Of a stretch of DNA of 64,000 nucleotides, positions 6,265 through 61,324 are shown piece after piece. Origin of the DNA: Scyliorhinus canicula (lineage: Eukaryota); the NCBI RefSeq assembly GCF_902713615.1, contig NC_052148.1:202565294-202629293 (forward strand), given 5' to 3'. Each line of letters starts with the position of its first letter. Within the stretch, counting starts at the first letter, position 1. The notes below the pieces were generated by a model. It did not search any database. It had not been told where the DNA came from and saw only the letters and a program-made list of their open reading frames with translations. The translations under genes and the position numbers were made by a program.

Positions 6265-6545
6265 TGATGTGACCATCAATTCACTAGAGACACGATTGGA
6301 AGTAAACTGTGGTTTTAATATTCTTACAACTGAGTCTGCCTGCGACCAGAGGAACTGAGAGCAGGCTCACGGCTGCAGCACTTTATACTTCTGGTAGTGG
6401 GAGGGGCCATGGGTGGAGCCCTGTACAAGCTCCTCATCTCCCCCTATGGGCAGAGCCGCGCAAAGGCTCACATACAGAGCCCACAAGGACATAATATAAT
6501 GCAATGCAATACAGTGTGAATTACAATACAGTATAATTCACCACA
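6265..6545 (-). mobile_element. Solo LTR related to the Gypsy A/B group
   Basis: TGATG...CCACA termini as in Gypsy A, with a perfect 5-bp TSD GCCTG (6260-6264 / 6546-6550). Confidence 0.85.
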
Positions 6546-8078
6546 GCCTGGCACCTCAAAAACACTGTCATTGTAGGGCAGGTATTAAGCTGTCGGTGGA
6601 AGGGCATAAGTGTCAGTCTTACATGGTCAGAAGGTTGCCTAATTTCTTGTCAGTGAGAGGTGTTTTTATCACTGATAGGATGTTTGCAGAATAATGTGGA
6701 GCAAGTTGGAGGAATGCCTGCGAAGGATTAACATACTTATCTTTAAATGGCATCCCTGAATGTTGCCGAGGAGAAGTCTCAACAGGAGACTGAGATAAAT
6801 TTGTTGCCAATAGGGGATGCAATGGCAGGATTCATGCAATAACCTCATATTTGAGGTTTCTCTTTTGAAGTGACTGTGGTTGTTCTACAGATCAGTTCAA
6901 ACACTGCTTAAAGCAATCAAGTAGGTCCAGAAGGAAGATTGAGTGCCAGTGTGTAGGGTTGCAAGCCATTTAGTATCCCTGTGGTAAACCTTTTCACAAT
7001 AACTTCATTGCAATGTTAATGTAAGCCTACTTGTGACAATAAAGATTATATTACATTACAGGGATAGGTTGGAGGTATGGGCTTAAATAGGGTGCGCTTT
7101 CCAAGGGCCGGTGCAGACTCGATGGGCCGAATGGCCTCCTTCTGCACTGTAAATTCTATGAAATAAAACCCCATTGGTTCCTCTCGCCCGACCAGAGCCA
7201 ACAATTAAAATAATATCTGGTAAAAAAATAACACTTCAAAGCAATTTAAAGTTCTTACAGGTTCTTTAAAATACTTTGAGAAATTTTAAAGCAACTTTAA
7301 AAGGTTTTCTGGGTATTTTACACAAAATTGCAAAAAAAAATAAGAATAATTAAAGACAGGTTTATATAATAAATATCAAAAAACATAATTAATGGGTCCT
7401 GTGACCTTCAAGTATGTCTGACCGCAGACAGTTTCTGATGTATAATTTTCTGTGATTTTCTCTGCTGTTGGCAATGGCTCGGTGGTGCCTGAAAGACATG
7501 TGGTCCCATATCAAACCCCATCCACCTGTTGTTATTGAGGTCCTCCAGTGCAAGGATACAGCAACCAAGATGGCCACTCCTAACAGGGCCGGAAGAAAAG
7601 CATCTGGAGAGTTGTTGTGGCGGAGACCCGATTCCATCTGATTTTCTCCTTTTTTGGTCAAAAATGAAAAGCCAAATAGATAAAAATCCAAACTTATATA
7701 GTCCTCATGTGTAATCAGCTAATGGGTTGGATTGGCCAAAGTATTAGTGACCTGAGGGCATTTAAAAAAGATAAACACTTTTTTGTAAGATTGAGGCAGG
7801 AGACAAGGAGAGGATATGCAGACATATTCAACTAAAGAAGAGTCAGAATTGAGCGTGGTTTATAATCATCTGGATTCTGAGACTGGATTAAAATGTTGAC
7901 AACACAAGAGTATTTATTATTTCCATAATAATTACATCCCATGAAGTTCTGAGAATACTTTATTATTTAGCTGCGGATTTTAGCTTTTTGGTACCAGTGA
8001 CTGTTTTCGTGAATATTGATCTGTAATAATATTCACACTGAGATTAATGACTGTAAAAATGCAGCAATTGTCAATCGA

Positions 8079-9685: not shown

Positions 9686-9910
9686 GGGCGGTCCAGTGGT
9701 GCAGTGGTTCGCACTGCTGCCTCACGGCGTCGAGGACCCTGGTTTAATCCCGGCCCTGGGTCACTATCCGTGTACAGTTTGCACATTCTCCCTGTATCTG
9801 CATGAGTCTCACACCCACAAACCCAAAGATGTGCAAGATAGTTGGATTGACCACACAGAACTGTCCCTTAATTGGAAAAAAAAGACTTGGGTACTTTAAC
9901 TTTAGAAAAA
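9686..9910 (+). mobile_element. Short A-tailed V-SINE (type 3)
   Basis: tRNA head, then cacaaacccaaagatgtgc, ending ttaattggaaaaa...gggtact plus an A-rich end. Confidence 0.85.
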
Positions 9911-9942
9911 TAACATTTATAAGCAAAATCTTGAAATCCATG

Positions 9943-10172
9943 TTTTTTTAAATATAAATTTAGAGTACTCAATTCATTTTTTCCAATTAAGGGGCAATTT
10001 AGCATGACCAATCCACCTACCTTGCACACCTTTGGGTTGTGGGGGCGAAACCCACGCAAACACGGGGTGAATGTGCAAACTCCACACAGACAGTGACCTA
10101 GAGCCGGAATTGAACCTGGGACCTCGGCACCGTGAGGCAGCAGGGCTAACCCACTGCGCCACTGTGCTGCCC
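9943..10172 (-). mobile_element. Short A-tailed V-SINE (type 3)
   Basis: Reverse copy of the same family, arranged tail-to-tail with 9686-9910. Confidence 0.9.
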
Positions 10173-18459: not shown

Positions 18460-19929
18460 TGTCATCATTGTCTACAGGAATAGTGCCAGAAGACTGGAGG
18501 ATTGCAAATGCTGTCCCCTTGTTCAAGAAGGGGAGTAGAGACAACCCTGGTAACTATAGACCAGTGAGCCTTACTTCTGTTGTGGGCAAAGTCTTTTAAA
18601 GGTTTATGAGAGATAGGATTTATAATCATCTGGAAAGGAATAATTTGATTAGGGATAGTCAACACGGTTTTGTGAAGGGTAGGTCGTGCCTCACAAACCT
18701 TATTAAGTTCTTTGAGATGACCAAATAGGTGGATGAGGGTAAAGCAGTTGAAGGGTGTATATGGATTTCAGTAAAGCGTTTGATAAGGTTCCCCACGGTA
18801 GGCTATTGCAGAAAATACAGAGGCATGGGATTCAGGGTGATTTAGCAGTTTGGATCAGAAATTGGCTTGCTGTAAGAAGACAGAGGGTGGTGGTTGATGG
18901 GAAATGTCCAGCCTGGAGTTCAGTTACTAGTGGTGTACCGCAAAGATCTGTTTTGGGGCCACTGCTGTTTGTCATTTTTATAAATGATCTGGAGGAGGGC
19001 GTAGAAGGATGGGTGAGTACATTTGCAGATGACACTAAAGTCGGTTGAGTTGTGGACAGTGCGGAAGGATGTTGCAGATTACAGAGGGACATAGATAAAC
19101 TGCAGAGCTGGGCTGAGAGGTGGCAAATGGAGTTTAATGCAGAAAAAGTGCGAGGTGATTCATTTTGGAAGGAGTAATAGGAAGACAGAGTACTGGGCTA
19201 ATGGTAAGATTCTTGGTAGTGTGGATGAGCAGAGAGATCTGGGTGTCCATGTACATAGATTCCTGAAAGTTGCCACCCAAGTTGATAGGGTTGTTAAGAA
19301 GGCGTACGATGTGTTAGCTTTTATTAGTAGATGGATTGAGTTTCGGAGCCATGAGGTCATGATGCAGCTGTACAAAACTCTGGTGCGGCCGCATTTGGAG
19401 TATTGCGTGTAGTTCTGGTCGCCGCATTATAGGAAGGATGTGGAAGCATTAGAAAGGATGCAGAGGCGATTTACCAGGATGTTGCCTAGTAGGGAGGGAA
19501 GATCTTATGAGGAAAGGCTGAGGGACTTAAGGCTGATTTCGTTAGAGAGAAGGTTAAGAGGTGACTTAATTGAGGCATACAAGATGATCAGAGGATTAGA
19601 TAGGGTGGACAGTGAGAGCCTTTTTCCTCGGATGGTGATGGCTAGTACGAGGGGACATAGCTTTAAATTGAGGGGAGATAGCTATAGGACAGATGTCAGA
19701 GGTAGGTTCTTTACTCAGAGAGTAGTAAGGGCGTGGAATGCCCTGCCTGCAACAGTAGTGCACTCGCTAACATTAAGGGCATTAAGGGCATTTAAATGGT
19801 CATTGGATAAACATATGGACGATAAGGGAATAGTGTAGATGGGCTTTAGAGGGGTTTCACAGATCGGCGCAACATCGAGGGCCGAAGGGCCTGTACTGCG
19901 CTGTAATGTTCTCTGTTCTATGTTCTATA
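18460..19929 (+). mobile_element. 5'-truncated CR1 LINE (RT to tail)
   Basis: NYRPVSLTSVVGK, YMDFSKAFDKVPH, FADDTKV and LRGDLIEAYK motifs; tail (gttctat)n; several stop codons. Confidence 0.95.
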
Positions 19930-22289: not shown

Positions 22290-22997
22290 TTTGGTGTACA
22301 GGTCCACAGGTCACTGAAAGGGGCAACACAGGTGGAGAAGGTAGTCAAGAAGGCATACGGCATGCTTGCCTTCATTGGCCGGGGCATTGAGTATAAGAAT
22401 TGGCAAGTCATGTTGCAGCTGTATAGAACCTTAGTTAGGCCACACTTGGAGTATAGTGTTCAATTCTGGTTGCCACACTACCAGAAGGATGTGGAGGCTT
22501 TAGAGAGGGTGCAGAAGAGATTTACCAGGATGTTGCCTGGTATGGAGGGCATTAGCTATGAGGAGAGGTTGAATAAAGTCGGTTTGTTCTCACTGGAACG
22601 ACGGAGGTTGAGGGGCGACCTGATAGAGGCCTACAAAATTATGAGGGGCATAGACAGAGTGGATAGTCAGAGGCTTTTTACTAGGGTAGAGGGATCAATT
22701 ACTAGGGGCCATAGGTTTAAGGTGTGAGGGGCAAAGTATAGAGTAGATGTACGAGACAAGTTTTTTACACAGAGGGTAGTGGGTGCCTGGAACTCCCTGC
22801 CGGAGGAGGTGGTGGAAGCAGGGGCGACAGTGACATTTAAGGGGCATCTTGACAAATACATGAATAGGATGGGAATAGAGGGATATGGACCCAGGAAGTG
22901 TAGAAGGTTTTAGTTTAGACGGGCAGCATAGTCGGCACAGGCTTGGAGGGCCGGAGGGCCTGTTTCTGTGCTGTACGTTTCTTTGTTCTTTGTTCTT
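22290..22997 (+). mobile_element. 5'-truncated CR1 LINE
   Basis: ORF 22332-22727 (KKAYGMLAFI...RPHLEYSVQFW...LRGDLIEAYK); tail (gttcttt)n. Confidence 0.95.
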
Positions 22998-37732: not shown

Positions 37733-38400
37733 TTGTGATTGATATTCCTATGTTACCCCGGAGTCATTAAGGTGGATGTTCCTGTGACCCATATAAACCT
37801 CACCCCTCCCCATCCTGAGGCCTACTGTAGCATGAGACCAATGAGTGCCCATCCCTACGCTGCCTGTTGCCAATCTACAGGCACCAGATGCCTCCCCTGA
37901 CTGACTGTGACACCTGCAGCTGACCATGCCCTCTGTGCAACAGACTGGGCACTACTGACAGTGGACAACATGCACCCCCCCCACCCCCCCAGACTAGGAC
38001 AGTCTTTGCAAGCTCAAATAATCAGCTGTCTTGCCGTTCTGACTGGGATTCCCTTGGGACTGTTGTCCTCGACTCTCTTTACTATCTGGCCACAAGATTT
38101 CTTTGCTGTAATCTTCCAAAGTGGTATTTGCAGAATGCATGCATTGTTCTGGTATATCACACACCATTTTGGAGAGGGTGTCAGCACACTTGGAGAGCAT
38201 CTGCCTGACCAAGTGGTTTATGCAGAATTCTTGCAGTCCGGGTAAAGTCTTCATTAACTACTACACTGCTGCCTGTAGACTTGTGAAAGAACCCTGCAAA
38301 CCACCAAACTCTTCAATCAGCAACTAATCAGAAAGTCAATGATGATTCCTTTAAATAACACTGTTGTGGTCCTTCTTGTTGCTGAAAGCATATTTAGCTG

Positions 38401-38629
38401 TGATGCACGATCAATTACACAAAGACGAGAGTTGAATGCAATCAAGGCTTTAATACACTAAGATGTGTGGCCTCCGACAGCAGCTGGCGAAATGACTGCT
38501 GTACGGGGAGCACATATATTTATACTCCACCTACTGGGCGGAGCCAGCAGGCAGGGAACTACCCCCGTACCTGTAGTACAGGGCCTTACCACAAATCACC
38601 TAATATATACATCAGTGGTGACTACCACA
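38401..38629 (-). repeat. 3' LTR of Gypsy A
   Basis: Direct repeat of 43464-43692. The minus strand reads TGTGG...CATCA. Confidence 0.95.
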
Positions 38630-38776
38630 TTCAGCCCCTGTTAAAATTGAGTCCAGCGGGATGGAGGAGAACTATATACAAGTACATGTTTTAAAATACA
38701 GAGAGAAAAAAAATTGAGTTCAGTGGGGTGGAGGAGAATTATACAGAAGGATGATGTTTCAAGAGTCCCGATCAAG

Positions 38777-41520
38777 TTACAGGTTCAGTCGGTCCGGAGC
38801 CTTGATCTGGCGCTGGGAGCGCCAACGTGGTAGCAGCGATTCCGGTGTTGGTCTGGTCCTCGGTGACTCCTGGAGTGTGCCAAAATCCTCGTCATCCTCG
38901 GGCGTGGGCAGGGGGAGGATGGATTGTCCTGGAGCGGGGGCTGCGGCTGGGTACGGCGGGGAATGGGAGGGTGGCGCCAGGCCGGATGGGTGTGTGTATG
39001 TGGAACCTGCTGGTGCCAGGTCCCTGAGGGAGACAGTATCTTGGCGGCCGTCGGGGTACGCTACATAGGCGTACTGTGGGTTGGCGTGGAGTAGCTGTAC
39101 CCTTTCAACCAACGGGTCCACCTTGTGGAGTCGTACGTGCTTACGGAGGAGTACGGGTCCTGGAGCTGCGAGCCAAGTCGGGAGCGACACCCTGGAGGTG
39201 GACTTCCTGGGGAAGGCAAAGAGACGTTCATGGGGTGTGTCGTTAGTGGCGGTGCATAGGAGCGACCGAATGGAGTGCAGGGCATCGGGGAGAACCTCCT
39301 GCCAGCGGGAGGCCGGGAGATTTCTGCACCATAGGGCCAGCTGGACAGCCCTCCAGACCGTCCCATTCTCCCTCTCCACCTGCCCGTTTCCCCGGGGGTT
39401 ATAGCTGGTCGTCCTGCTCGAGGCGATACCCTTGTTGAGCAGGAACTGACGCAGCTCATCGCTCATGAATGAGGATCCCCTGCCGCTGTGGACGTAGGCG
39501 GAGAAGCTGAACAGAGCGAAGATGGTGTTAAGGGCTTTGATGACGGTGACAGACATCATATTAGGGCATTGGATCGCGAAGGGGAATCTGGAGTACTCAT
39601 CGACCACGCTGAGGAAGTACGTGTTATGGTCAGTGGAGGGGAGGGGCCCTTTGAAGTCCACACTGAGGCGTTCAAAGGGGGAGGCGGCGCGCACGGTTCA
39701 GCTGGTATAAGTGCGGTTTGCACTCTGCACAGACCTGGCAGTCTCTGGTGATGGCCCTGACTTCCTCGATGGAGTAGGGCAGATTGTGGGCCTTGATGAA
39801 GTGGTACAACCATGTGACTCCCGGGTGACAAAGATTGTCATGCAGAGTCCGGAGTCAGTCCACTTGTGCGCTGGCACATGTACCTCGGGATAGGGCATCA
39901 GGGGGCTCATTGAGCTTACCGGGGCGATACAAAATCTCGTAGTTGTAGGTGGAGAGCTCGATCCTCCACCTCAAGATTTTATCGTTTTTCAAATTTGCCC
40001 CGCTGTGTGTTGTTAAACATGAAAGCTACCAACCGTTGGTCAGTGAGGAGAGTGAATCTCCTGCCGGCCAGGTAATGCCTCCAATGCCGCACAGCTTCAA
40101 CGATGGCTTGGGCCTCTTTTTCGACGGAGGAGTGCCGGATTTCGGAGGCATGAAGGGTTTGTGAAAAGAATGCCACGGGCCTGCGGCCTGGTTGAGAGTG
40201 GCAGCCAGAGCGACGTCTGATGCGTCGCTCTTGACTTGAAATGGTAACGTCTCGTCGACTGCGTGCATCGCAGCCTTGGCGATTCGGCCTTAATACAGTT
40301 GAAGGCCTGGTGAGCCTCGGCCATTAGGGGAAAAAGAGTGGATTGGATGAGTGAGCGGGCCTTGTCCACATCATTTGGGACCCACTGGCGTAGTAAGAAA
40401 AGAACCCCAGGCAACGTTTGAGGGCCTTGGGCAGTGGAGGAGGGGGAGTTCCATGAGGGGGCGCATGCGGTCGGGATCGGGCCCCAGAACTCCATTCTGG
40501 ACCAAATAGCCAAGGATCGCTATGCGGTTCGTGCTGAACACACACTTCTCCTTGTTGTAATGTTGAGGAGAGTGGCGGTGTGGAGAAATTTGGCACGGTT
40601 GGCGTCATGGTCCTGCTCATTGTGGCCGCAGATGGTGACATTGTCAAGGTACGGGAAGGTGGCCTGCAGCCCGTACCGGTCGACCATGCGGTCCATTTCC
40701 TGTTGGAAGACCGAGACCCCGTTGGTGACGCCGAAGGGAATCCTGAGAAAGCGGTAAAGGCGGCCATCTGCCTCGAAGGCAGTGTATGGGCGGTCCGCCT
40801 TACGGATGGGGAGCTGGTGGTAGGTGGATTTTAGATCCACAGTTGAGAAGACCCGGTACTGTGCAATCTGATTGACCATATCAGATATGCGTGGGAGGGG
40901 GTTTGCGTCGAGCTGCGTGTACCGATTGATGGTCTGGCTGTACTCCACGACCATTCGGTGTTTCTCCCCAGTTTTCACCACTACCACTTGGGCTCTCCAG
41001 GGGTTGTTGCTGGCCTCGATGATGCCTTCCCGAAGCAGCCGCTGGACCTCGGACCTGATGAAGGTCCTGTCCTGAGCGCTGTACCGTCTGCTCCTGGTGC
41101 CGACGGATTTGCACTCTGGGGTTAAGTTTGCAAATAGGGAAGGTGGGTCGACCTTTAGGGTCGCGAGGCCGCACACAGTAAGGGATGGTAGGGGCCCGCC
41201 AAATTTCAATTTAGGCTCTGGAGGTTGCTCTGGAAGTCCAGGCAGTGTAGTAAGGCAGCGCAGGGGTTGGGAAGGACGTAGAGGCGGAAGCCGGTAAACT
41301 CCATTCCCTGGACAGTGAGAGTGGCTATGCAGTACCGCCGGATCGCCACGGTGTGGGACCTGGAGGCCAGGGAGATTCTCTGATTGACGGGGTGTACCGC
41401 GAGGGAGCAGCGCCTTACCGTATCGGGATGGGTGAAGCTCTCGGTGCTCCCGGAGTACAGCAGACAGGAGATCTCGTGCCCATCAATTTTCATGTTTGTA
41501 GAGGCGGTTGCTAGGTTGTG
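38777..41520 (-). pseudogene. Gypsy A pol (PR-RT-RH-IN), frameshifted
   Basis: ORF pieces 41206-41637, 40520-41209, 39979-40268 and 38777-39694. Confidence 0.93.
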
Positions 41521-42193
41521 TGGGCGAGACTGGTCAATCGTGACCGAGGCGAGACGCGACTGGTCGTCGATGGTAGCAGACGATGGGATGCCTGGGGGGC
41601 ATGGGTCCTGTACGATGGCAGCGCACACGGGCCGCACGTGTCATGGGGAAGACAAGATGGCGGCGTTTGATGCTCCTGGGGAGGACAAGATGGCGGTGCC
41701 CACTGCCCGCACATGGTGGGTGTTGAACAAGATGGCGGTGCCCACGGGCCGCACGTGGTCCGAAGAGGGGAAGATGGTGGCGCCCACTGGCCGTACAATG
41801 GAAGGGTCGGATCAATAGCGGCGACTGAGCGGGCCTGGCACACCGCAGTGAAGTGTCCCTTCTTGCTGCAGGCCTTACAAAGGGCACTCCGGGCCGGGCA
41901 GCGTTGTCGGGGGTGTTTTGGTTGCCCATAGAAGTAACATCTGGGGCCCCCAGGGTTGGTTGGCTGAGTGGGGTCCCCGATGGGGCGGCCGTCTGCAGAG
42001 TCCACGATGCGTAGGAGTGGGCCGCGCGGCCGGGGGTTTAGGCCTGGAAGTTGCGCGAGGCGATCGTCAGTGAGAGCGGAAGTTTTTTGGTTGCTGCGAG
42101 GTCGAGCGTGGCCCCTTCTAAAACGCACTGTCGGATGTAATCTGACCCTATCCCCGTAACAAAAGCGTCCCTCATAAGCAAGTTCAAGTGTAC

Positions 42194-43057
42194 GGAAGGA
42201 TGTTGCAGGTTACAGAGGGACATAGATAAGCTGCAGAGCTGGGCTGAGAGGTGGCAAATGGAGTTTAATGTGGAGAAGTGTGAGGTGATTCACTTTGGAA
42301 AGAATAACAGGAATGCGGAATATTTGGCTAATGGTAAAATTCTTGGTAGTGTGGATGAGCAGAGGGATCTCGGTGTCCATGTACATAGATCCCTGAAAGT
42401 TGCCACCCAGGTTGATAGGGTTGTGAAGAAGGCCTATGGTGTGTTGGCCTTTATTGGTAGAGGGATTGAGTTCCGGAGCCATGAGGTCATGATGCAGCTG
42501 TACCAAACTCTGGTACGGCCGCATTTGGAGTATTGCGTACAGTTCTGGTCGCCTCATTATAGGAAGGACGTGGAAGCTTTGGAACGGGTGCAGAGGAGAT
42601 TTACCAGGATGTTGCCTGGTATGGAGGGAAAATCTTATGAGGAAAGGCTGATGGACTTGAGGTTGTTTTCGTTAGAGAGAAGAAGGTTAAGAGGTGACTT
42701 AATAGAGGCATACAAAATGATCAGAGGGTTAGATAGGGTGGACAGCGAGAGCCTTCTCCCGCGGATGGAGGTGGCTAGCACGAGGGGACATAGCCTTAAA
42801 TTGAGGGGTAATAGATATAGGACAGAGGTCAGAGGTGGGTTTTTTACGCAAAGAGTGGTGAGGCCGTGGAATGCCCTACCTGCAACAGTAGTGAACTCGC
42901 CAACATTGAGGGCATTTAAAAATTTATTGGATAAGCATATGGATGATAAGGGCATAGTGTAGGTTAGATGGCCTTTATTTTTTTTTTTCCATGTCGGTGC
43001 AACATCGAGGGCCGAAGGGCCTGTACTGCGCTGTATCGTTCTATGTTCTATGTTCTA
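42194..43057 (+). mobile_element. Young 5'-truncated CR1 inserted in Gypsy A gag
   Basis: Uninterrupted 234-aa ORF2 C-terminus (42258-42962), (gttctat)n tail and tgtac at both junctions. Confidence 0.95.
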
Positions 43058-43463
43058 TGTACCGTGGCCGTGACGGCCTGACAGTCACAGTCTCTGACTA
43101 GGGGGATTACAGCATGCCAGAAATCTTCCACAGACTCACCCTGGAGTTGACTACGAGTGAAGAGGATGTGTCAGGCGTAAAGCGTGTTAGTCCGCTGAGC
43201 GTAGTTTTCTTTCAGTAGCACCATGGCGTCATCATAAGTCGGCATGTTCTGGATAAGCGGAAAGACTTTGGAGCTCAGCCGCATGTAGAGGATCTGAATC
43301 TTCTGAGCTTCTGGAATTGGGTCTGGTGCAGACCTGACGTAAGCTTCGAAACAGGCTAGCCAATGTTCAAAGTCCTTTTTGGCGTCGCTTGATTGGGGAT
43401 CCAGCTGCAGGCAATCCGGCTTGATGCAGAGGTCCATCTTCTGAAAACTTTAGTGTATTAAAT

Positions 43464-43692
43464 TGATCAATGATCAATTACACAAAGACGAGAATTGAAT
43501 GCAATCGAGGCTTTAATGCACTAAGATGTGTGGCCTCATGCAGCAGCTGGCGAAATGGCTGCTGTACGGGGAGCACACATATTTATACTCCGCCTACTGG
43601 GAGGAGCCAGCAGGCAGGGAACTACCCCCGTACCTGTAGTACAGGGCCTTACCACAAATAACCTAATATATACATCAGTGGTGACTACCACA
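43464..43692 (-). repeat. 5' LTR of Gypsy A
   Basis: Lies upstream of the gag ATG at 43437, with TATAAA and ATTAAA on the minus strand. Confidence 0.95.
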
Positions 43693-43814
43693 AGCTGAGG
43701 TTGTGAAAGAAAGTAGACTGGCATCAAACAGCATTCCATGCTAATCGCAAAGTGCCTACTCTGCATATCGCTAGCAGACGCTTCCATGCTGTTCAATTTT
43801 CCTACCCGAACTGC

Positions 43815-45079: not shown

Positions 45080-45305
45080 GGGCAGCACGGTGGCACAGTG
45101 GTTAGCATTGTTGCCTACGGCGCTGAGGACCCGGGTTCGAATCCCGGCCCTGGGTCACTGTCCGTGTGGAGTTTGCACGTTCTCCCCGTGTTTGCGTGGG
45201 TTTCACCCCCACAACCCAAAGATGTGCAGGTTAGGTGGATTGGCCACGCTAAATTGCCCCTTAATTGGAAAAACATTATTGGGTACGCTAAATTTAAAAA
45301 AAAAA
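45080..45305 (+). mobile_element. Short A-tailed V-SINE (type 3)
   Basis: 16-bp TSD aggtttgcagacccct. Confidence 0.95.
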
Positions 45306-47973: not shown

Positions 47974-48303
47974 TTTGAAACAAACCTGTTGGATTTTAAC
48001 CTGGTGTTGTAAGACTTCTTACTGTTCTTATAGCAAGTTTCACATTCTAATTCTCCAGAATTTTCAATTGAATTTATTGGTGGATATCTTACATTTGCGC
48101 TCTCCAGATGTTACTGCAGCGAGTTCTTTTGAATCTTTGAAAGTCTGGTGGAGTGATGAAGAATGACACTGCAAGCTACTTGTCCAGAGAGTACCCTGAA
48201 TAAGGTAGCTATGTGACACTGAGAAAACCAATAAAAGGTGACTTTTGTTCTATTTATTAAATGGGAGTAAAGGTACTTCCAGTTGCCCAACAGAAATAAT
48301 GTT

Positions 48304-48526
48304 TTTTAAAATAATTTTAGAGTGCCCAATTCAGTTTTTCCAAATAAGGGGCAATTTAGCGTGACCAATCCACCTACCCTGCACATCTTTGGGTTGTGGG
48401 GACGAAACCCACGCAAACACGGGGAGAATGTGCAAACTCCACACGGACAGTGACCCAGAGCCGGGATTGAATCTGGGACCTCAGCGCCGTGAGGCGCAGG
48501 GCTACCACTGCGCTACCCTGCTGCCC
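48304..48526 (-). mobile_element. Short A-tailed V-SINE (type 3)
   Basis: 16-bp TSD caacagaaataatgtt. Confidence 0.92.
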
Positions 48527-48559
48527 TACAACAGAAATAATGTTGATGTAAACAGAAGT

Positions 48560-48870
48560 GTGGCACGGTAGCACAGTGGTTAGCACTGTTGCTTCACAGC
48601 ACCAGGGTCCCGGGTTCGATTCCTGCTTGGGTCATTGTCTGTGCGGAGTCTTCACGTTCTCCCCGTGTCTGCGTGGGTTTCCTCCGGGTGCTCCAGTTCC
48701 CTCCCACAAGTCCCAGAAGACGTGCTGTTAGGTGAATTACACACTCTGAATTCTCCTTCTGTGTACCCGAACAGGTGCCAGAGTGTGGCAACTGGGGCTT
48801 TTCACAGTAACTTAATTGCAGTGTTAACGTAAGCTTACTTGTGACAATAAAAAAAGATTATTGTTATTGT
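48560..48870 (+). mobile_element. V-SINE type 2
   Basis: Matches 3374-3695. Confidence 0.88.
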
Positions 48871-49321: not shown

Positions 49322-49545
49322 GGGGCAGCACGGTGGCACAGTGGGTTAGCACAGCTGCCTCACGGCGCCGAGGTCCCAGGTTCGATCCCGGCTCTGGGTC
49401 ACTGTCTGTGTGGCGTTTGCACATTCTCCCCGTGTTTGCGTGGGTTTCGGCCCCACAACCCAAAGATGTGCAGGGTAGGTCAATTGGCCACGCTAAATTG
49501 CCCCTTAATTGGAAAAAATGAATTGGGTACTCTAAATTTAAAAAA
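49322..49545 (+). mobile_element. Short A-tailed V-SINE (type 3)
   Basis: 17-bp TSD aaagaacatctagttca. Confidence 0.95.
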
Positions 49546-51070
49546 AAAGAACATCTAGTTCATGACTCGTTAAGGTTTATTAAATTACAATAACGTGTGT
49601 AGAAAACAATACTAATACTACTAACGAACTGTGAACTGGAATACGAGAGCTAATACTATCCACAAAGACTCCTCACCCAGACTCCCGAGGTTGCAGTGTC
49701 ACGTGGTGTAATTCTACTGCCACCTGCTGGTTGGAGGTCTAACTATTAACACACAGAATTGCTTATGCATATCATTATAGACACCAAGTGTGTTATAAAT
49801 GCTGTAATTGTAGGATGGAGTGAGGCCCAAGGGAAGGAATAGTTGTAGTCTTGAGGGGCTGAAAAGAGAACAAGTTCGGAGACTGTGCAATGTGTCTTGA
49901 TTATGGAGAGTTCTTGAGCTGCTGAATTTGGAAATTTTATACCACCGAAAGCAATGTGGCTGTAGCAGCTACTGTAACTCTGACAGTAACTCTGTATTTT
50001 TTCACTGTTCGGGTATGTGGTGGCTTCTTTTCACTCTAGCTACTATTTCTCTCAACTTGGTAATTAAACCACAGTTATTTTTGAAATGGTGACAACTTAT
50101 TTTTGTAAACACCAAGGCATTTATTCCATGCCTTCCTGTACACCAATTATTTTAAAATATTTAAATTCAATTTTCAGATATTCTACCATTTTAAACACAC
50201 AATACAACAAAGAAAAAACAACACAAACCCTCCCCCCCAAACCCCCAGCCCCTGTAACCTCAACCAAACACCCCAGTTTGCCCCCCTCTTAACAGCTGAT
50301 GGTAACCAGATCCTTGAAATGTAATACAAACAAACCCCATCTCTTACGTAACCCCCTCACTTTCCCCCTTCAAAGCAAATTTCACCTTTTCCCGATACAA
50401 AAACTCCATTAGATCCCCCAGCCACACCGAGGCACAGGGCGGAGAAGCTGACCTCCACCCTAACTGGACCCGTCTGTGAGCGATCAACGAGGCAAAGGCT
50501 AAAGCATCCGCCCCGCTCCTGTCTGCAGCTCCAGCAAGTCCGTCATCCCAAATATGGCCTCCAGGGGACTGGGCTCCAAATCCATGTGCAAGATCACCGA
50601 AATAGTGCTGGAGAATGACCTCCAAAATTACTCCAACTTAGGGCAGGACCAGAACATATGCACATGATGGGCTGGGCCCTGCCCACATCGTTCACAAATA
50701 TCCTCCACCTCCTCAAACAGCCGGCTCATCCTTGACTTTGTCAGGTGCGCTCTATGTACTACCTTTAGCTTTATCAACTCCGGCCTCGCGCTCGAGGTTG
50801 AAGCATTCACCCTCCACAGCACTTCACACTACAACCCCTCCTCCAGCGCCATCCCCAACTCCTCGTCCCACTTGGCCTTAACCACCCCCCCCTCCAGAGA
50901 TGCTATATCCTTCTCCAAAATCCTTCCATAGATTGCCGAAAAGACCCTCCACCCCCCTCCAGCCAATCACCAACAGAAGCCCCTCCAACAATGAAGAAGG
51001 TGGTGCCACCGCAAAAGTTGGAAAAACATTTTTCATGAAATCCCGCATCTACATACACATTTTTGTGGGG

Positions 51071-51287
51071 ATAAATTTAGAGTACCCAATTCATTTTCTC
51101 CAATTAGGGGGCAATTTAGCGTGGCCAATTCACCTCACCTGCACATCTTTGGGTTGTGGGGGAAAAATCCATGCAAACACGGGGAGAACGTTCAAACTCC
51201 ACACGGACAGTGACCCAAAGCCGGGATCAAACCTGGGACCTCGGGGCTGTGAGACAGCAGTGTTACCACTGCGCCACCATGCTGCCC
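51071..51287 (-). mobile_element. Short A-tailed V-SINE (type 3) in the L1
   Basis: Matches the family. Confidence 0.88.
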
Positions 51288-52571
51288 TTCACCTGCGTAC
51301 ACACGAAAACCTCCTCCCGCGGGATCCCAAACTTCTCCCCCAACTCTTCCAAATTTGCAAACCGCTCTTCTAGAAATAGGTCCTTCATTTTCATCACCCC
51401 TCATTCCTCCCATCCCTGAAACCGAGCATCCATCTTCACTGGCTCAAATCCATGGTTCCCTCAGATCGGCCCCACCCCGACCTAAAGTGCTGCCAAAATT
51501 GCCTCCATATTTTCAATGTGGTTACCATCACCGGACTTCCCAAAAACTTTGCTGGCGCAAACGGGAGCGGTGCCAATGCTAGAACCCGCAACCCCAATCC
51601 TTATAAGAGCCTGCCTCCATCCTCGCCCACTATGCCTCTGGATCCCTGCTCCAGCCCCGCACCTTCTCTTTGTCCACCTTGTGTACCTGCTCCAGTGCCA
51701 CCACCAACTCCCCTGCCCCATTCCAAACCTGAATAATCTCTCTCACAACTGCCTGATGGTTATCTCACCCCTTACTACCACCTTCAACGCTTCCCATACC
51801 ACTGATGGTGAAACCTCCCCGTTCCTATTGAACCCCACACAATCCTCAATCACCTTCCCCATCTTTGCACAAAAATTTGGATCTGCCAACAGCCCCACAT
51901 CCAGTCTCTATGCAGGCCCCTGTACTGGCCCCTTCTCTAGGACACATCCACCCAATGTGTAGCATAGTTCCAGATAAAAATCGCCGAGTATTCTGCTTTC
52001 CTCACCCCAGCTAACAGCGCCTTCCCCATATAAAAAAGTAAATCCTTGAATACACATTGTGTACTGGCAAAAAGAACGAAGACTCCCTGTCCCGCGCATG
52101 TAAAATCCTCCACGGGGCCGTCCCTCTCTCACCCTCCATCTCTCCCATAAACAACAACATCATCTTCGCTCCCCCTGCCCCCCATCCGAGGGGGTCAGAG
52201 AATGTGGCTTGGGCTTATAGATCTTCAGATCCAGCACTGTATTCAAGTCCCCCCCAAAGTATTAACTGGTGCGTACCAAGTTCGGTATGGCAGCCAACTT
52301 CTTCATAAATTCTACGCCATTCCAATTCAAGGCATACAGGATAACCAGCACCACAAACTTCCCCTCCAAAACACACATTACTATCACGTACCAGCCCCCC
52401 GGTCCATCTGAAACCTCACCCTCTTACCTACCAATATCGCTACCCCCGGGCCCTACTATCAAAGCCCGAGGGGAATACCTGACTCACACAGCCCTTCTGA
52501 AGCCTCACCTGGTCCTTCACCCTTGGGTGGGTCTCTTGCAGCAGAACCCAGTCAGCTTTCAAGCTCTTTGA

Positions 52572-52816
52572 TTTTTTAAAAAATTATTTTTTTGAAATAA
52601 ATTTAGAGTACCCAATTATTATTTTTTTTCCAATTAAGGGGCAATTTTAGTGTGGCCAATCTACCTAACCTGCACATCTTTGGGTTGTGGGGGTGAAACC
52701 CACGCAAACACGGGGAGAATGTGCAAACTCCAAATGGACAGTGACCCAGGGCCGGGATTCGGACCCGGGTCCTCAGCGCCGCAGTCCCAGTGCTGTCCAC
52801 TGCCACCGTGCTGCCC
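52572..52816 (-). mobile_element. Short A-tailed V-SINE (type 3) in the L1 endonuclease region
   Basis: 13-bp TSD tcaagctctttga. Confidence 0.93.
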
Positions 52817-55800: not shown

Positions 55801-56472
55801 TATCACTTTTTCACTGAACTTCACAGCAACTTCGGGACCTGAATTCCCTGTTTGTTCACGGCGGTGGGATTCTCCGGTCCTGTTGCAGTGAATGGAGTTC
55901 TGGCTGAATGCCAAATTCTCCATTCTCGCTGGCAGTGATGGCGGGAGAACTCAGATTGGAGAATCCTGGCCTGAGAGTCCTCACATGCACAGCATAATGC
56001 AGAAATCAAGAAGATACTGCTGATGATTCTATGCTTCTCCAGAGGGTGTGTTAACGGGGTTCCTCCTAGTGTGCAATCCCTAAATCAGTGAATTGATGAA
56101 AACTTCCATTAATGCTGTGAGTCTCAATGTACACACTTGTAAAAGTTACAACTTGTTCACTGAGATATAACTGAGTTATTAGTGATGTACTAACTTCATA
56201 ACTACTTATGTACATCCTCACTGGCTCTGAAAGCTAATTTTATATTTGTACAATAACAAATGCGTTCATAATGATTTAAAATTCTGCATTTTAAAAATAT
56301 TTTTGAACAGTTTCTTTTGATATTTTAGTTCCTATCCTAATCCAATCATGATTCATATATTTCAGTGTCACTACAGGAGTACCTCTACAGCTAGTGTCCT
56401 AGGCCCAGAATTATTCAGCTGCTCTCTCATTGAGCTTCCCCTATCGTTGGGTCAGAAGTGGGATGTTCACTG

Positions 56473-56682
56473 AGTGGTAATCACCACTGTTGTACATATT
56501 AGAATATATATGGTAAGACCCTGTACTACAGGTACGGTGGTAGTCCCTGCCTGCTGGCTCCGCCCAGTAGGCGGAGTATAAATATGTGTGTCCTCCGTAC
56601 AGCAGCCATTTCGCCAGCTGCTGTGGGAGGCCACACATCTTAGAGTAATAAAGCCTCAGTTGTATTCAACACTCGTGCATCA
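56473..56682 (+). repeat. 5' LTR of Gypsy B
   Basis: TATAAA at 56577 and AATAAA at 56647. It has an 18-bp U5 deletion relative to the 3' LTR, bounded by tcgt microhomology. Confidence 0.95.
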
Positions 56683-56708
56683 ATTTATTACTCTAAGATT
56701 TTCAGAAG

Positions 56709-59700
56709 ATGGACCTCCACATCAAGCCGAATCGCCTGCAGCGGGATCCGCAATCACGCGACGCCAAAAAGACTTTCAACACTGGCTAGCTTGTTTTGAG
56801 GCGTACATCAGGTCTGCACCAGACCCAATTCCGGAGGCTCAGAAGATCCAGATACTGTACTCGCGCCTGAGCTCCAACGTCTTTTCTCTGATCCAGGATG
56901 AGCCGAACTACGACGAAGCCATGGCGCTACTAAAAGAGAATTACGCCCAGCGGACGAACACACTCTTCACCAGACACGTACTCTCCACTCGCTGTCAGCT
57001 CCCTGGTGAGTCCGTAGAAGATTTCTGGCGCGCTTTGATTCCACTAGTCAGAGACTGTAACTGTCAGACCGTCATGGCCACGGAACATTCCGTGTTCATG
57101 CGGGATGCTTTTGTTACGGGGATAGGGTCAGACCTCATACACCAGTGACTTTTGGAGGGGGCCACGCTCGACCCTCGCAGAAACAAAGAAACTAGCGCTA
57201 TCGATGACAGTCGCCTTGAGCAATATTCAGGCCTACACCCCCAGCCGTGCGGCTCATCCCTCCTACACATCATGGACCCCACAGACAGCTGCCCCATCGG
57301 GCCCTTACCCAGCCAATATGCCTGTGCCACGTGCCAGCCAGCCAACCCTGGGGGGCCCCGATGTTACTTCTGCGGGCAACAGAAACACCCCCGCCAATGC
57401 TGCCTGGCCCACACCACCCTTTGTAAGGCCTGCAGAAGAAAGGGCACTTTGCTACGGTGTGCCAGTCGCCGCTATCATCCCAACCCTCCCCTCGCTTACG
57501 GACAATGGGCCATCTTCACCTCCTCGGACCACGCATGGCCAGTGGGCGCCGCCATCTTCTCCCCCTCAGACCATGCGTGGCCAGTGGGCACTGCCATCTT
57601 CCCCTCCATGGAACATGTGCGGCCCATGGGCGCCGCCATCTTTTTCAACCCCCGCCACGTGCGGCCCGTGGGTGCCACCATCTTGTCCACCCCATGACCT
57701 CTGGGCGCCGCCATCTTGTCTTCCCCACGGCACAGGGGCACCACCATTGTTCCAGGACCCGTGCCCCCCGGGCACCCCATTGTCCGACACCAGCGACGAC
57801 CAGCCACGACACGCCTCGGTCACAATCGACCAGTCTCGCCCGCACAACCTAGCCACCGCCTTGACCAGCATGAAGATCGATGGGCATGTGACCCCTTGCC
57901 TGCTGGACTCCGGGAGCACCAAAAGCTTCATCCACCCAGATACAGTAAGGCACTGCTCCCTCGCGGTACACCCCACCAATCAAAGAATTTCCCTGGCCTC
58001 TGGATCCCACTCCATGGTGATCCCAGGGTACTGTATAGTCACGCTCACGGTCCAGGGCATAGAATTCAGCAGCTTCCGCCTCTATGTCCTCCCCAATCTT
58101 TGCGCTGCCCTGCTACTCAGCCTGGACTTCCAGTGTAACCTCCAGAGCCGAACCTTGAAATTTACTGGGTCCCTCCCACCCCTTACTGTGTGCGGACTCG
58201 CGACCTTAAAGGTCGACCCACCTTCCCTATTTGCAAACCTAACCCCGGATTGCAAACCAGTCGCCACCAGGAGTAGACGGTACAGCACCCAGGACAGGAC
58301 CTTCATCAGGTCCGAGGTCCAGCGTCTGCTTCGGGAAGGCATCATCGAGGCCAGCAACAGCCCCTGGAGAGCCCAAGTGGTAGTTGTTAAAACTGGGGAG
58401 AAACACGGAATGGTTGTTGACTACAGCCAGACCATCAATTGATATACGCAGCTCGACGCGTACCCCCTCCCACGCATATCTGATATGGTGATTAAGATTG
58501 CACAGTACCGGTTCTTCTCAACTGTAGACCTCAAATCCGCCTACCACCAGCTCCCCATCCGTAAGGCGGACCACCCATACACTGCCTTCGAGGCAGATGA
58601 CCGCATCTACCACTTTCTCAGGGTTCCCTTCAGCGTCACCAACGGGGTCTCGGTTTTCCAACGGGAGATGGACCGAATGGTCGACTGGTACAGGCTGCGG
58701 GCCACCTTCCTGTACCTAGACAATGTCACCATCTGCGGCCACGAACAGCAGGACCACGATGCCAACCTTGCAAAATTTCTCCACACCGCCACTCTCCTAA
58801 ACCTCTCCTATAACAAGAAGTGCGTATTCAGCACAAACCGCTCAGCCATCCTCGGCTATGTGGTCCAGAACGGACTTCTGGGGCCCAATCCCGACCGCAA
58901 GTGCCCCTTCATGGAGTTTCCACTCCCCCACTGCCCCAAGGTCCTCAAACGCTGCTTGGGGTTCTTTTCATACTATGCCCAGTGGGTCCCAAACAAGGCC
59001 CGCCCACTCATCCAGTCCACCCTTTTCCCCCTGATGGCCGAGGCTCAACAGGCCTTCAACCGTATTAGAGTCGATATCGCCAAGGCCACGATGCACGCAG
59101 TAGACGAAACACTACCCTTTCAAGTGGAGAGCGACGCATCAGACGTCGCCCTAGCTGCCACGGTCAATCAGGCAGGCAGGCCAGTGGCATTCTTTTCCCA
59201 CACCCTTTATGCCCCCGAAATTCAGCACTCCTCTGTCGAAAAAGAGGCCCAAGCCATCGTTGAAGCTGTGCGGCATTGGAGGCATTACCTGACCGGCAGG
59301 AGATTCACTCTCCTCACTGACCAACGGTCGGTAGCTTTCATGTTTAACAACACACAGCGGGGCAAGATCACAAATTATAATATCTTGAGGTGGAGGATCG
59401 AGCTCTCCACCTACAACTACGAGATTTTGTATCAGCCCGGCAAGCTCAACGAGCCCCCCCGATGCCCTATCCCGAGGTACATGAGCCAGCGCACAAGTAG
59501 ACCGACTCCAGACCCTTCACAACAGCCTTTGTCACCCGGGAGTCACACAGTTGTACCATTTCATAAAGGCCCGCAATCTGCCCTACTCCATCGAGGAAGT
59601 ACGGACAATCACCAGAGACTGCCAGGTCTGTGCGGAGTGCAAGCCGCACTTCTACCGGCCGGACCGTGCGCACCTGGTGAAGGCCTCCCGCCCCTTTGAA

Positions 59701-60588
59701 CGCCTCAGCGTGGATTTCAAAGGGCCCTTCCCCTCCACTGACCGTAACACGTATTTCCTCAGTGTGGTCGATAAGTACTCCAGATTCCCCTTCGCCATCC
59801 CATGCCCCAACATGACGTCTGTAACTATCATCAAAGCCCTCAACACAATCTTCGCTCTGTTCGGCTTCCCCGCCTACATCCACAGTGACAAGAGATCCTC
59901 ATTCATGAGCGATGAGCTGCGTCAGTTCCTGCTCAGCAGGGGTATCGCCTCCAGCAGGACGACCAGCTATAACCCCCGGGAAAACGGGCAGGTAGAGAGG
60001 GAGAATTGGACGGTCTGGAGAGCCATCCAACTGGCCCTACAGTCCAGATATCTCCCAGCCTCCCGCTGGCAGGAGGTCCTCCTGACGCACTGCACTCCAT
60101 TCGGTCACTACTATGCACCGCCACTAACAACACGCCCCATGAACGTCTCTTTGCCTTCCCTAGGAAGTCCACATCTGGGGTGTCGCTCCCAACTTGGCTC
60201 GCAGCTCCAGGACCCATATTCCTCCGTAGGCACGTCTGACTCCACAAGGCGGACCCGTTGGTTGAAAGGGTGCAGTTTCTCCACGCTAACCCCCAGTATG
60301 CCTGCGTGGCGTACTCCGACGGCCGCCTGGATACTGTCTCCCTCAGGGACCTGGCACCAGCAGGTTACACACACACACACACCTCTAGCCCGGCTCTGCC
60401 CCCCTCCCCCGGCGCACCCAGCAGCAACCCCCCCAGGACCATCCATCCTCCCCCTGCCCACGCCGAGGATGAAGAGGATTTTGGCACACTCCCGGAGTCA
60501 CCGAGGACCAGACCAACACCAGAAATGCCGCCACCACTGTGTTGCTCCCAGCGGCACACGAAAGGCCCCGGACCGACTAAATCTATAA
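56709..60588 (+). pseudogene. Gypsy B gag-pol with frameshifts and stops
   Basis: ORF pieces 56588-57148, 57204-58442, 58485-59699 and 59551-60588. Confidence 0.93.
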
Positions 60589-60719
60589 CTGGTTAGGGAC
60601 TATCAAACCACTGGACTTCAAAAGAATTTTTTTTTCTTGTTTCTGTACATTAAACTCAAACTTGCTCTGTATATAGTTCTCCACCACCCCCGCCGAACTC
60701 AATTTTAACAGGGGGTGAG

Positions 60720-60947
60720 TGTGGTAATCACCACTGTTGTCCATATTAGAATGTGTATGGTAAGACCCTGTACTACAGGTCCAGTGGTAGCCCCTGCCTG
60801 CTAGCTCCGCCCAGTAGGCGGTGTATAAATATGTGTGTCCGCCGTACAGCAGCCATTTTGCCAGCTGCTGTGGGAGGCTACACATCTTAGAGTAATAAAG
60901 CCTCAGTTGTATTCAACTCTCGTCTCTGTGCAATTGATCGTGCATCA
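60720..60947 (+). repeat. 3' LTR of Gypsy B
   Basis: TGTGG...CATCA, 228 bp. Confidence 0.95.
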
Positions 60948-61324
60948 CACTGATGATTGCACAATGTTCCGTGTCATTCGCAACTTCCCAAGTGTTTTAC
61001 AGTCCATGCCCACTTCCAGCAAGGCCTGGATAATAACATGGATGTAGTGGATTGCACGAGTTCAAGAAATTGGTTCACCATCACCTTTCCAAGGACAATA
61101 AGGAAAGGGCAACAAATGCTGGCCTAGCCAGCGATGCCCATATCCCAAGAATAAACAAATAAAAAATCCATGAATAACACAAATGGTTCCCAAGCTCTGC
61201 CCAGTAACCTCTGTTCAGCTCACTACCAGGATGTATTCAGGAGATGCCCCGGGAGACTCCTATTAATCCTTTATTTTGTCTCATATTGAATTATTTCCAA
61301 CATTTAAAAAAAGTGTCACAATAA

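What the first reader, a model, noticed from the sequence alone, without database searches (positions are those of the whole stretch)
43450..43524. Two compensatory substitutions preserve the LTR:leader duplex in Gypsy A
Seen, on the element strand: copy A has LTR segment ttagTgtaTtaaa (3' LTR, 38449-38461) and leader tttaAtacActaa (43450-43462). Copy B has ttagAgtaAtaaa and tttaTtacTctaa. Both differing positions change together on the two sides, so 13/13 pairing is kept while the poly(A) signal switches between AATAAA and ATTAAA. The 5' LTR of A (43512-43524) has one private mismatch, consistent with decay after insertion. Inference: covariation is expected if the PBS is templated from a self-primer in each cycle, or if the pairing is under selection. 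A fixed tRNA primer would not predict it.
Basis: seen in the sequence. Interest (0 to 1): 0.85.

Follow-up and report, generated by a model that had tools for sequence, protein, structure and literature searches.

The report
Self-priming site in shark Gypsy retrotransposons
The stretch just after the left repeat of two decayed shark Gypsy retrotransposons is an exact mirror of a piece of that repeat, and the same design with different letters in five distant relatives suggests these elements prime their own reverse transcription instead of borrowing a host tRNA.

Summary
Copies A (minus strand, 38401-43692) and B (plus strand, 56473-60947) are decayed Ty3/Gypsy elements. In both, the LTR ends in CA. 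One A follows, and then 13 nt (A) or 16 nt (B) that are the reverse complement of an LTR segment ending at the poly(A) hexamer. A and B differ at two paired positions, and both are compensated.

I extended the test to five more lineages found through gag homology (L001, L004, L006, L008, L009). All have the same layout with different letters:
- The 12 core positions are Watson-Crick paired in 84 of 84 cells across 7 lineages.
- There are no G-U pairs and no one-sided changes.
- Sliding the register by 1-3 nt leaves 24-39% paired.

There is no tRNA-type site, and gag starts 2-23 nt further on. The best reading is a Tf1-type self-primed primer binding site, probably re-copied from the primer in each cycle.

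It differs from Tf1/sushi in three ways: there is no chromodomain, the named relatives are called 17.6-like, and the primer arm overlaps the poly(A) signal and is predicted to lie about 30 nt inside the transcript. The transcript start is unproven, and the solo-LTR prediction could not be tested.

The scan flagged the same design on two other pieces of this genome (s1-240128, s1-216892).

The parts
38401..43692 (-). Gypsy copy A: a decayed full-length Ty3/Gypsy element with many frameshifts and stops
   Evidence: The LTR pair is 93.9% identical, the 5-bp duplication is CAGCT, and the translation is.
43464..43692 (-). A 5' LTR, running TG...CA
38401..38629 (-). A 3' LTR
43693..43697 (-). A target-site duplication CAGCT; the second copy is at 38396-38400
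43512..43524 (-). A 5' LTR arm TTAGTGCATTAAA, which has one private T>C change and overlaps the ATTAAA poly(A) hexamer
38449..38461 (-). A 3' LTR arm TTAGTGTATTAAA, the state at the time of insertion
43450..43462 (-). A leader arm, the proposed primer binding site TTTAATACACTAA. It follows the LTR end CA (43464) and one spacer A (43463).
43435..43437 (-). A gag start codon, 12 nt after the leader arm
42190..43058 (-). An unrelated repeat nested in A's gag, which accounts for A's extra length. Copies also lie at 19059-19928 and 22293-22801.
56473..60947 (+). Gypsy copy B: a decayed Ty3/Gypsy element with gag, protease, RT, RNase H and integrase
   Evidence: Pfam; LTR pair 94.1% identical; duplication CACTG at 56468-56472 and 60948-60952
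56473..56682 (+). B 5' LTR. Its first T has mutated to A, and 18 bp are deleted in U5.
60720..60947 (+). B 3' LTR, full length
56577..56582 (+). TATAAA box. It is followed by the initiator-like CCATTTC, whose A at 56608 is the predicted transcript start, 29 nt before the LTR arm.
   Evidence: Read from the sequence. It is conserved in all four LTRs. The start itself is inferred, not shown.
56637..56652 (+). B 5' LTR arm ATCTTAGAGTAATAAA, the proposed self-primer, ending at AATAAA
56684..56699 (+). B leader arm, the proposed primer binding site TTTATTACTCTAAGAT. It pairs 16 of 16 and follows CA (56682) and spacer A (56683).
60884..60899 (+). The same arm in B's 3' LTR
56709..56711 (+). B gag start codon
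6265..6545 (-). Solo LTR of a structurally similar family: TGTGGT start, TATA, TCAGT, arm GTAAGAATATTAAA(A), and end ...ACATCA. Its duplication CAGGC lies at 6546-6550 and 6260-6264.
   Evidence: It has no blastn similarity to the A or B LTRs.

Best explanation
The leader arm is the primer binding site of a self-primed Ty3/Gypsy retrotransposon. In the genomic RNA, a 12-16 nt segment of the 5' LTR region folds back onto the sequence that begins one nucleotide after the LTR. In most lineages that segment ends at the poly(A) hexamer. By analogy with Tf1, the element's RNase H would cut the RNA just 3' of the LTR arm. The freed 3' end would then prime minus-strand DNA through U5 and the short remainder of R. 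Plus-strand synthesis later copies the primer, so the binding site is rewritten from the LTR arm in each cycle. A change in the LTR arm therefore reappears as its complement in the leader.

What is shown: the anatomy, the exact position next to the LTR end, the absence of a tRNA-type site, and clade-wide compensated variation.

What is inferred: the cleavage, the priming itself, the rewriting, and where the transcript starts.

A likely side effect is that the duplex hides the poly(A) signal at the 5' end only.
For: 1. In A and B the arm starts 1 nt after the LTR's terminal CA. The LTR ends are fixed by target-site duplications.
2. The duplex is 13 of 13 in A (using the 3' LTR arm) and 16 of 16 in B. 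The B hairpin folds at -20 kcal/mol, z = -6.3.
3. Gag begins 9-12 nt after the arm, so there is no room for another binding site, and there is no TGG next to the LTR.
4. Five further lineages reached by a gag profile have the same layout with different letters: LTR ...CA, then A, then 12-15 nt complementary to an LTR segment 31-53 nt upstream (L001, L004/L005, L006, L008, L009/L010).
5. Over 12 core positions in 7 lineages, 84 of 84 cells are Watson-Crick. Ten of the 12 columns vary, with at least 14 changes of pair type. There are no G-U pairs and no one-sided changes. Slid registers give 24-39% pairing.
6. Chance matches to the same motif layout do not extend. In viral contigs, 85 of 94 stop at the 6 forced bases and the longest reaches 9. 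In metagenome contigs, all 28 stop at 3-4.
7. Lineages with open gag and pol frames (L004, L008) have perfect duplexes. The old copy A has an uncompensated private change in its 5' LTR arm, as expected for decay after insertion.
8. Self-priming with a binding site complementary to the 5' LTR region is an established mechanism for Tf1/sushi elements (PMC10085805, PMC6317226).
Against: - No experiment or RNA-end data support the cleavage or the priming.
- The RNA reads did not resolve a transcript start or a poly(A) site.
- TATA plus initiator motifs place the predicted start 29-36 nt upstream of the LTR arm in A, B, L001 and the solo LTR. In Tf1 the primer is the first 11 nt of the RNA. A primer carrying a 5' flap would need a second cut, or some block, to give the sharply bounded 12-16 nt duplex that is observed.
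- In A the leader has two extra unpaired changes at duplex positions 14-15.
- L003, a decayed copy with a GTG start, shows no matching LTR arm.
- The lineages other than A and B come from metagenome contigs of unknown hosts. In three of them the LTR start is inferred only from a polypurine tract followed by TG.
Confidence: 0.75

Rival explanations
1. The duplex exists only to hide the poly(A) signal in the 5' copy of R, as the HIV-1 poly(A) hairpin does. Reverse transcription is primed by something else.
For: In 5 of 7 lineages the LTR arm ends exactly at AATAAA or ATTAAA. The complementary leader exists only downstream of the 5' LTR, so only the 5' signal would be masked.
Against: - L004 (...GTGTTAA) and L009 (...ATGAAAA) keep the duplex without a canonical hexamer in the arm.
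- Masking does not require the second arm to sit exactly 1 nt after the LTR's CA, yet it does in all 7 lineages.
- No other candidate primer binding site exists between the LTR and gag.
- The lack of any G-U pair or one-sided change fits copying better than selection on RNA pairing.
Confidence: 0.1
2. It is a selected RNA structure with another role, such as packaging, dimerisation or control of gag translation. It would be maintained by ordinary compensatory evolution.
For: The hairpin lies 2-23 nt upstream of the gag AUG. A second small stem (GCC...GGC) often stacks on it.
Against: - Of the 112 pairwise changes on both sides, 82 are transversion flips with no G-U path, and no intermediate state is seen.
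- The position fixed at the LTR edge is exactly what a primer binding site needs.
- This reading does not explain how the element primes.
Confidence: 0.08
3. A host tRNA or other host RNA primes at this site, and the match to the LTR is incidental.
For: Most Ty3/Gypsy lineages, including the Mag lineage in mosquitoes, use tRNA primers (PMC3286476, PMC13524379).
Against: - There is no TGG, and the site differs in every lineage while always matching that lineage's own LTR.
- A conserved host RNA cannot track seven different sequences.
Confidence: 0.02
4. The match is chance, or reflects linkage of nearby sites within two related copies.
For: The original claim rested on only two copies, and the arms are AT-rich.
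Against: - The pattern has 6 matches against 0.25 expected.
- The chance that the A-versus-B compensation arises at random is about 1 in 700.
- Five independent lineages repeat the design.
- Control hits never extend.
Confidence: 0.01

Closest known systems
Tf1/sushi group of chromoviruses (Tf1, Tf2, sushi-ichi, Tcn1-like): self-primed reverse transcription
   Same: - There is no tRNA-type binding site.
- The binding site lies right after the 5' LTR's terminal CA and is complementary to a short piece of the 5' LTR region of the same RNA.
- The fold-back topology has the rest of R and U5 in the loop.
- A further small stem next to the main duplex recalls the 'pretzel' structure (PMC10085805).
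   Different: - No chromodomain is found in the window copies or in the open pol frames of L004 and L009.
- The few named RT relatives are labelled 17.6-like, not Tf2-like, and come from sharks, rays, cnidarians, molluscs and worms.
- The primer arm overlaps the poly(A) hexamer. From TATA and initiator motifs it is predicted to lie about 30 nt inside the transcript rather than at its first base.
- The duplex is 12-16 bp rather than 11.
HIV-1 poly(A) hairpin and other occlusion of the 5' poly(A) signal in retroviruses
   Same: The hexamer of the 5' R copy is buried in a stem that cannot form at the 3' end.
   Different: Here the partner strand is the primer binding site position itself. Two lineages keep the stem without a canonical hexamer. 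No function has been tested.
Mag-lineage Ty3/Gypsy elements (Mag, SURL, Jule)
   Same: The size is similar (about 4.5-5 kb), the LTRs are short (about 115-280 bp), gag and pol are separate, the duplication is 5 bp, and the lineage is spread across metazoans.
   Different: Mag-lineage elements in mosquitoes have tRNA-Ser or tRNA-Leu binding sites (PMC3286476). I did not place this clade on a tree, so membership is open.
Predicted self-priming in Ty1/copia TAR elements and the hairpin site of GalEa elements
   Same: These elements also lack a tRNA site, and an internal complementary sequence is proposed as the primer (PMC6317226, PMC6934838).
   Different: They belong to a different superfamily, and no link to the poly(A) signal has been described.

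Membership tests
Ty3/Gypsy (Metaviridae) LTR retrotransposon | Domain order is protease, RT, RNase H, integrase, preceded by gag | tested here: met
   Pfam on the pieces of copy B found Asp_protease_2, RVT_1, RT_RNaseH and rve, with weak Retrotrans_gag and DUF7083. The same was found in L004.
Ty3/Gypsy (Metaviridae) LTR retrotransposon | Direct LTRs running TG...CA, a target-site duplication, and a polypurine tract before the 3' LTR | tested here: met
   The duplications are CAGCT and CACTG, and a purine run precedes TGTGG.
Tf1/sushi self-priming chromoviruses | No tRNA-type binding site; the site after the 5' LTR is complementary to the element's own 5' LTR region | tested here: met
Tf1/sushi self-priming chromoviruses | Chromodomain at the integrase C-terminus | tested here: not met
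   No PF00385 hit at E up to 1 in A's integrase piece or in the open pol C-termini of L004, L005 and L009.
Tf1/sushi self-priming chromoviruses | The self-primer is the very 5' end of the mRNA | tested here: inconclusive
   TATA plus initiator motifs predict a start 29-36 nt upstream of the arm. The RNA reads gave no defined ends. The sharp 12-16 nt limit of the duplex argues for a short primer.
Tf1/sushi self-priming chromoviruses | Three-duplex 'pretzel' structure around the primer duplex | tested here: inconclusive
   Single-sequence folds show a small stem (GCC...GGC) stacked on the main duplex in most lineages. There is no alignment-based support.
Tf1/sushi self-priming chromoviruses | RNase H cuts the RNA duplex to free the primer, and the binding site inherits the primer's sequence | not testable with these tools
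   This needs cDNA mapping. The pattern of perfect Watson-Crick covariation is indirect support only.
Tf1/sushi self-priming chromoviruses | RT and integrase fall inside the Tf1/sushi clade on a tree | not tested
   No reference sequences were available. Named relatives are called 17.6-like and none Tf2-like, which is only a hint.
tRNA-primed LTR elements | Binding site complementary to a tRNA 3' end (TGG...) within a few nt of the 5' LTR | tested here: not met
   The leaders start A+TTT or A+TTA in all 7 lineages. The only TGG belongs to the gag start context ATGG.
5' poly(A)-signal occlusion hairpins | The hexamer of the 5' R copy lies inside a stable stem | tested here: met
   This holds for A, B, L001, L006 and L008, but not for L004 and L009. 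The functional effect was not tested.

The most novel reading that the evidence does not exclude
A widespread animal Ty3/Gypsy lineage without a chromodomain, found from sharks to marine invertebrates or plankton, primes itself with an internal piece of R that is its own poly(A) signal. One duplex would then do three jobs. It supplies the primer. It sets a very short working R, from the hexamer to the cleavage site. It silences the 5' poly(A) signal. The binding site would also be rewritten from the LTR in every cycle, so the pair can drift freely and offers no fixed target for tRNA-fragment silencing.
Probability: 0.3. Interest if true: 0.7.

Novelty: new variant of a known kind. Interest (0 to 1): 0.55.

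Why it matters
Self-priming has been demonstrated for Tf1, and in the papers I could search it is otherwise assigned mainly to its chromovirus relatives. Recent surveys of animal Ty3/Gypsy elements look only for tRNA sites and leave many elements without one (PMC13524379 found a site in 1151 of 1512). A clade-wide self-complementary site in a non-chromovirus animal lineage would have three consequences:
- It would widen the known range of the mechanism.
- It would give annotators a simple rule for these elements: CA, then A, then the complement of the poly(A)-signal segment.
- It would explain binding-site variation that tracks LTR variation.

Self-primed elements also escape dependence on host tRNAs, and possibly silencing by 3' tRNA fragments that target tRNA-type sites (PMC7472051). 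The near-perfect covariation is a natural data set for asking whether such sites are copied or selected.

Tried and rejected
1. A search with the 88-residue gag piece among length-matched proteins found nothing.
Within-family copies could therefore not be collected.
3. L002 has only 73 nt upstream, so the LTR arm lies off the contig. L003 has no matching arm and looks decayed. L007 is an LTR without a leader.
4. RNA runs laid on copy B gave reads on both strands and no start or end peaks, so R could not be mapped.
6. A metagenome scan for the junction of the A/B family found nothing. A looser scan gave 28 chance hits only. A viral-contig scan gave chance hits only. I used these as negative controls.
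7. A scan of the window for the same hairpin design found only copy B, and none in shuffles.
8. The papers by Lin and Levin 1997 and Atwood-Moore 2006 are not held.
9. I rejected chance, linkage, and a tRNA or other host primer (see the rival explanations).

Full report
**What is in the window**

Two related Ty3/Gypsy elements are present.
- Copy A lies on the minus strand at 38401-43692. Its LTRs are 229 bp and 93.9% identical, and its target-site duplication is CAGCT.
- Copy B lies on the plus strand at 56473-60947. Its LTRs are 94.1% identical, and its duplication is CACTG.
- Pieces of B hit aspartyl protease, RVT_1, RT_RNaseH and rve, with weak gag models.
- Both copies are full of frameshifts and stops.
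- A carries a nested 870-bp repeat in gag.
- A and B are 82-85% identical, so they represent two subfamilies. About 6% divergence between the LTRs of each copy marks them as old insertions.

**Check of the observation**

- On the element strand the LTR ends in ...ATCA. One A follows, and then the leader arm.
- In A the leader arm at 43450-43462 is the exact complement of the 3' LTR arm at 38449-38461 (13 of 13). The 5' LTR arm at 43512-43524 has one private T>C change.
- In B the duplex is longer than reported: 16 of 16 between 56637-56652 and 56684-56699. The local hairpin folds at -20 kcal/mol against -5.9 for shuffles (z = -6.3).
- The motif occurs 6 times in the window against 0.25 expected.
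- A and B differ at two arm positions, and both are matched by the complementary change in the leader. I estimate the chance of that at about 1 in 700.
- One detail was not reported: at duplex positions 14-15, A's leader has two changes that break pairing which B keeps.

**Position of the leader arm**

Gag starts 12 nt (A) or 9 nt (B) after the arm. Nothing like a tRNA site (TGG...) lies next to the LTR. The arm therefore occupies the only place where a primer binding site can be.

**Relatives**

A profile of the gag N-terminus found 965 proteins. The closest come from sharks and rays: Scyliorhinus torazame, S. canicula, Mustelus, Hypanus and Hemitrygon. The window is therefore very probably from a catshark or a near relative.

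Contigs from metagenome assemblies gave readable 5' ends for five further lineages: L001, L004 (identical to L005), L006, L008, and L009 (identical to L010). Every one repeats the design. The LTR ends in CA, one A follows, and then 12-15 nt are exactly complementary to an LTR segment 31-53 nt upstream. The letters differ widely between lineages.

Counted from the LTR edge, over 12 positions in 7 lineages:
- 84 of 84 cells are Watson-Crick when A's 3' LTR arm is used, and 83 of 84 with its decayed 5' arm.
- Ten of the 12 columns vary, with at least 14 changes of pair type.
- There is no G-U pair and no one-sided difference.
- Sliding the register by 1-3 nt leaves 24-39% paired.
- Beyond position 13 the pairing falls to chance level.

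Other loci added these points:
- An LTR from another sample (L007) has the arm TTAGTGTAATAAA, halfway between A and B.
- Lineages with open reading frames (L004, L008) have perfect duplexes.
- L003, a decayed copy, has no matching arm.
- L002 is cut too short to tell.

**Controls**

Loci that match the same motif layout by chance do not extend.
- In viral contigs, 85 of 94 matches stop at the six forced bases and the longest reaches 9.
- In metagenome contigs, all 28 matches stop at 3-4.
- The same hairpin scan on the window finds only copy B, and nothing in 50 shuffles.

**Mechanism**

The anatomy is that of self-primed reverse transcription, shown for Tf1 and assigned to the Tf1/sushi group. 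A piece of the 5' LTR region of the RNA folds back on the site after the LTR, RNase H cuts, and the freed 3' end primes (PMC10085805, PMC6317226, PMC5006619). I take this as the best explanation, with confidence 0.75.

Copying of the primer by the plus strand would rewrite the binding site in each cycle. That accounts for the complete absence of G-U pairs and of half-changed pairs. It also accounts for the dominance of transversion flips, 82 of 112 pairwise changes on both sides. Ordinary compensatory evolution rarely produces such flips. The cleavage, the priming and the rewriting are all inferred.

**How it differs from Tf1/sushi**

- No chromodomain is detectable in the window copies or in the open pol frames of the relatives.
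- The few RT-RNase H relatives that carry a name are called 17.6-like and none Tf2-like. The relatives come from sharks, rays, cnidarians, molluscs, nematodes, flatworms and a ctenophore.
- Size and LTR length resemble the Mag lineage, but mosquito Mag elements use tRNA sites (PMC3286476). I built no tree, so the clade is unplaced.
- In 5 of 7 lineages the LTR arm ends exactly at the poly(A) hexamer, and it is always followed by G or A and then CC or GC.
- In A, B, L001 and the solo LTR, a TATA box followed about 31 nt later by an initiator-like motif predicts a transcript start 29-36 nt upstream of the arm. In Tf1 the primer is the first 11 nt.

The sharp end of the duplex at 12-16 bp argues for a short primer instead. 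So either the real start lies at the arm, or there is a second cut. The RNA runs did not settle this: reads lay on both strands, and no start or end peaks appeared.

If the arm is internal, the working R would be only the roughly 18 nt between the hexamer and the cleavage site. The duplex would also mask the 5' poly(A) signal. I regard masking as a plausible extra role, not the main one. L004 and L009 keep the duplex without a canonical hexamer, and masking does not need the arm to abut the LTR.

**The solo LTR at 6265-6545**

- It has the same architecture: a TGTGGT start, TATA, TCAGT, an arm ending in ATTAAAA, and the end ...ACATCA. Its duplication is CAGGC. It has no blastn similarity to A or B.
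- Its family is extremely abundant in the source species.
- The related species (organism B) has the empty site (the joint 6258>6545).
- The window copy has a private letter inside the arm: the family majority at 6321 is G on the plus strand.

**Literature**

In the library I could search, self-priming is described for:
- the Tf1/sushi and Tcn1 chromoviruses;
- the copia TAR lineage;
- a list of fungal elements (PMC6317226, PMC6934838, PMC10085805).

I found no description of it in a non-chromovirus animal Gypsy lineage, and none of a primer arm that is the poly(A) signal. The key older papers (Butler 2001; Lin and Levin 1997) are not held, so prior description cannot be excluded. The scan itself flagged the same design in copy B of this window (s1-243447) and on two other pieces of this genome (s1-240128, s1-216892).

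**Verdict**

The feature is best filed as a new variant of a known kind: self-primed LTR retrotransposons. The open questions are where the transcript starts and where the clade sits on the tree.

Noticed in passing
window 6260-6550: The solo LTR belongs to a very high-copy family in the source species (summed contig depth about 1e5). A related species has the empty site, shown by a contig that joins 6258 to 6545 and skips 286 bases (LTR plus one duplication). The family majority letters differ from the window copy at 6321 (G) and 6335 (C).
   Followed up: partly
window 42190-43058, 19059-19928, 22293-22801: An unrelated repeat of about 870 bp is nested in the gag of copy A. It has further copies at about 19.1-19.9 kb (87% identity) and 22.3-22.8 kb (71%).
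   Followed up: no
window 56660-56682 and 43464-43480: Both 5' LTRs decayed after insertion. B lost 18 bp of U5 between short CTCGT/ATCGT repeats. In A the LTR end GATCGTGCATCA became GATCATTGATCA, three clustered changes that create a tandem TTGATCA.
   Followed up: partly
protein P0003 (Scyliorhinus torazame XP_072334480.1); window 43174-43437 as the gag reference: An annotated isoform of nuclear envelope integral membrane protein 1a starts with about 100 residues of this family's gag N-terminus (70% identity to copy A). The gene model is probably an LTR-driven alternative first exon or a chimeric model.
   Followed up: partly
L004:2406-2480, L006:44-103, L008:100-168, L009 upstream of 1042: The GCC or GGC right after the LTR arm pairs with a GGC or GCC further along U5. 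This gives a small stem stacked on the main duplex, which recalls the extra duplexes of the Tf1 'pretzel'. It rests on single-sequence folds only.
   Followed up: partly
window 45141-45304 and 49385-49548: Direct repeats lie 4244 bp apart and are 91% identical, with further related pieces at 9706-10148, 48293-48802 and 51053-52796. This is probably another LTR element or a nest of elements. I did not examine it.
   Followed up: no
window 56400-61000: RNA runs of the species hold many reads 88-95% like copy B on both strands, so the family or its relatives are transcribed or present as carry-over DNA. No defined ends were seen.
   Followed up: partly
L004:2-2500, L009:3-1042, L001:150-448: Several metagenome contigs read pol end, polypurine tract, LTR, leader, gag. 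This order is expected from collapse of the two LTRs during assembly, from tandem copies, or from one-LTR circles.
   Followed up: no
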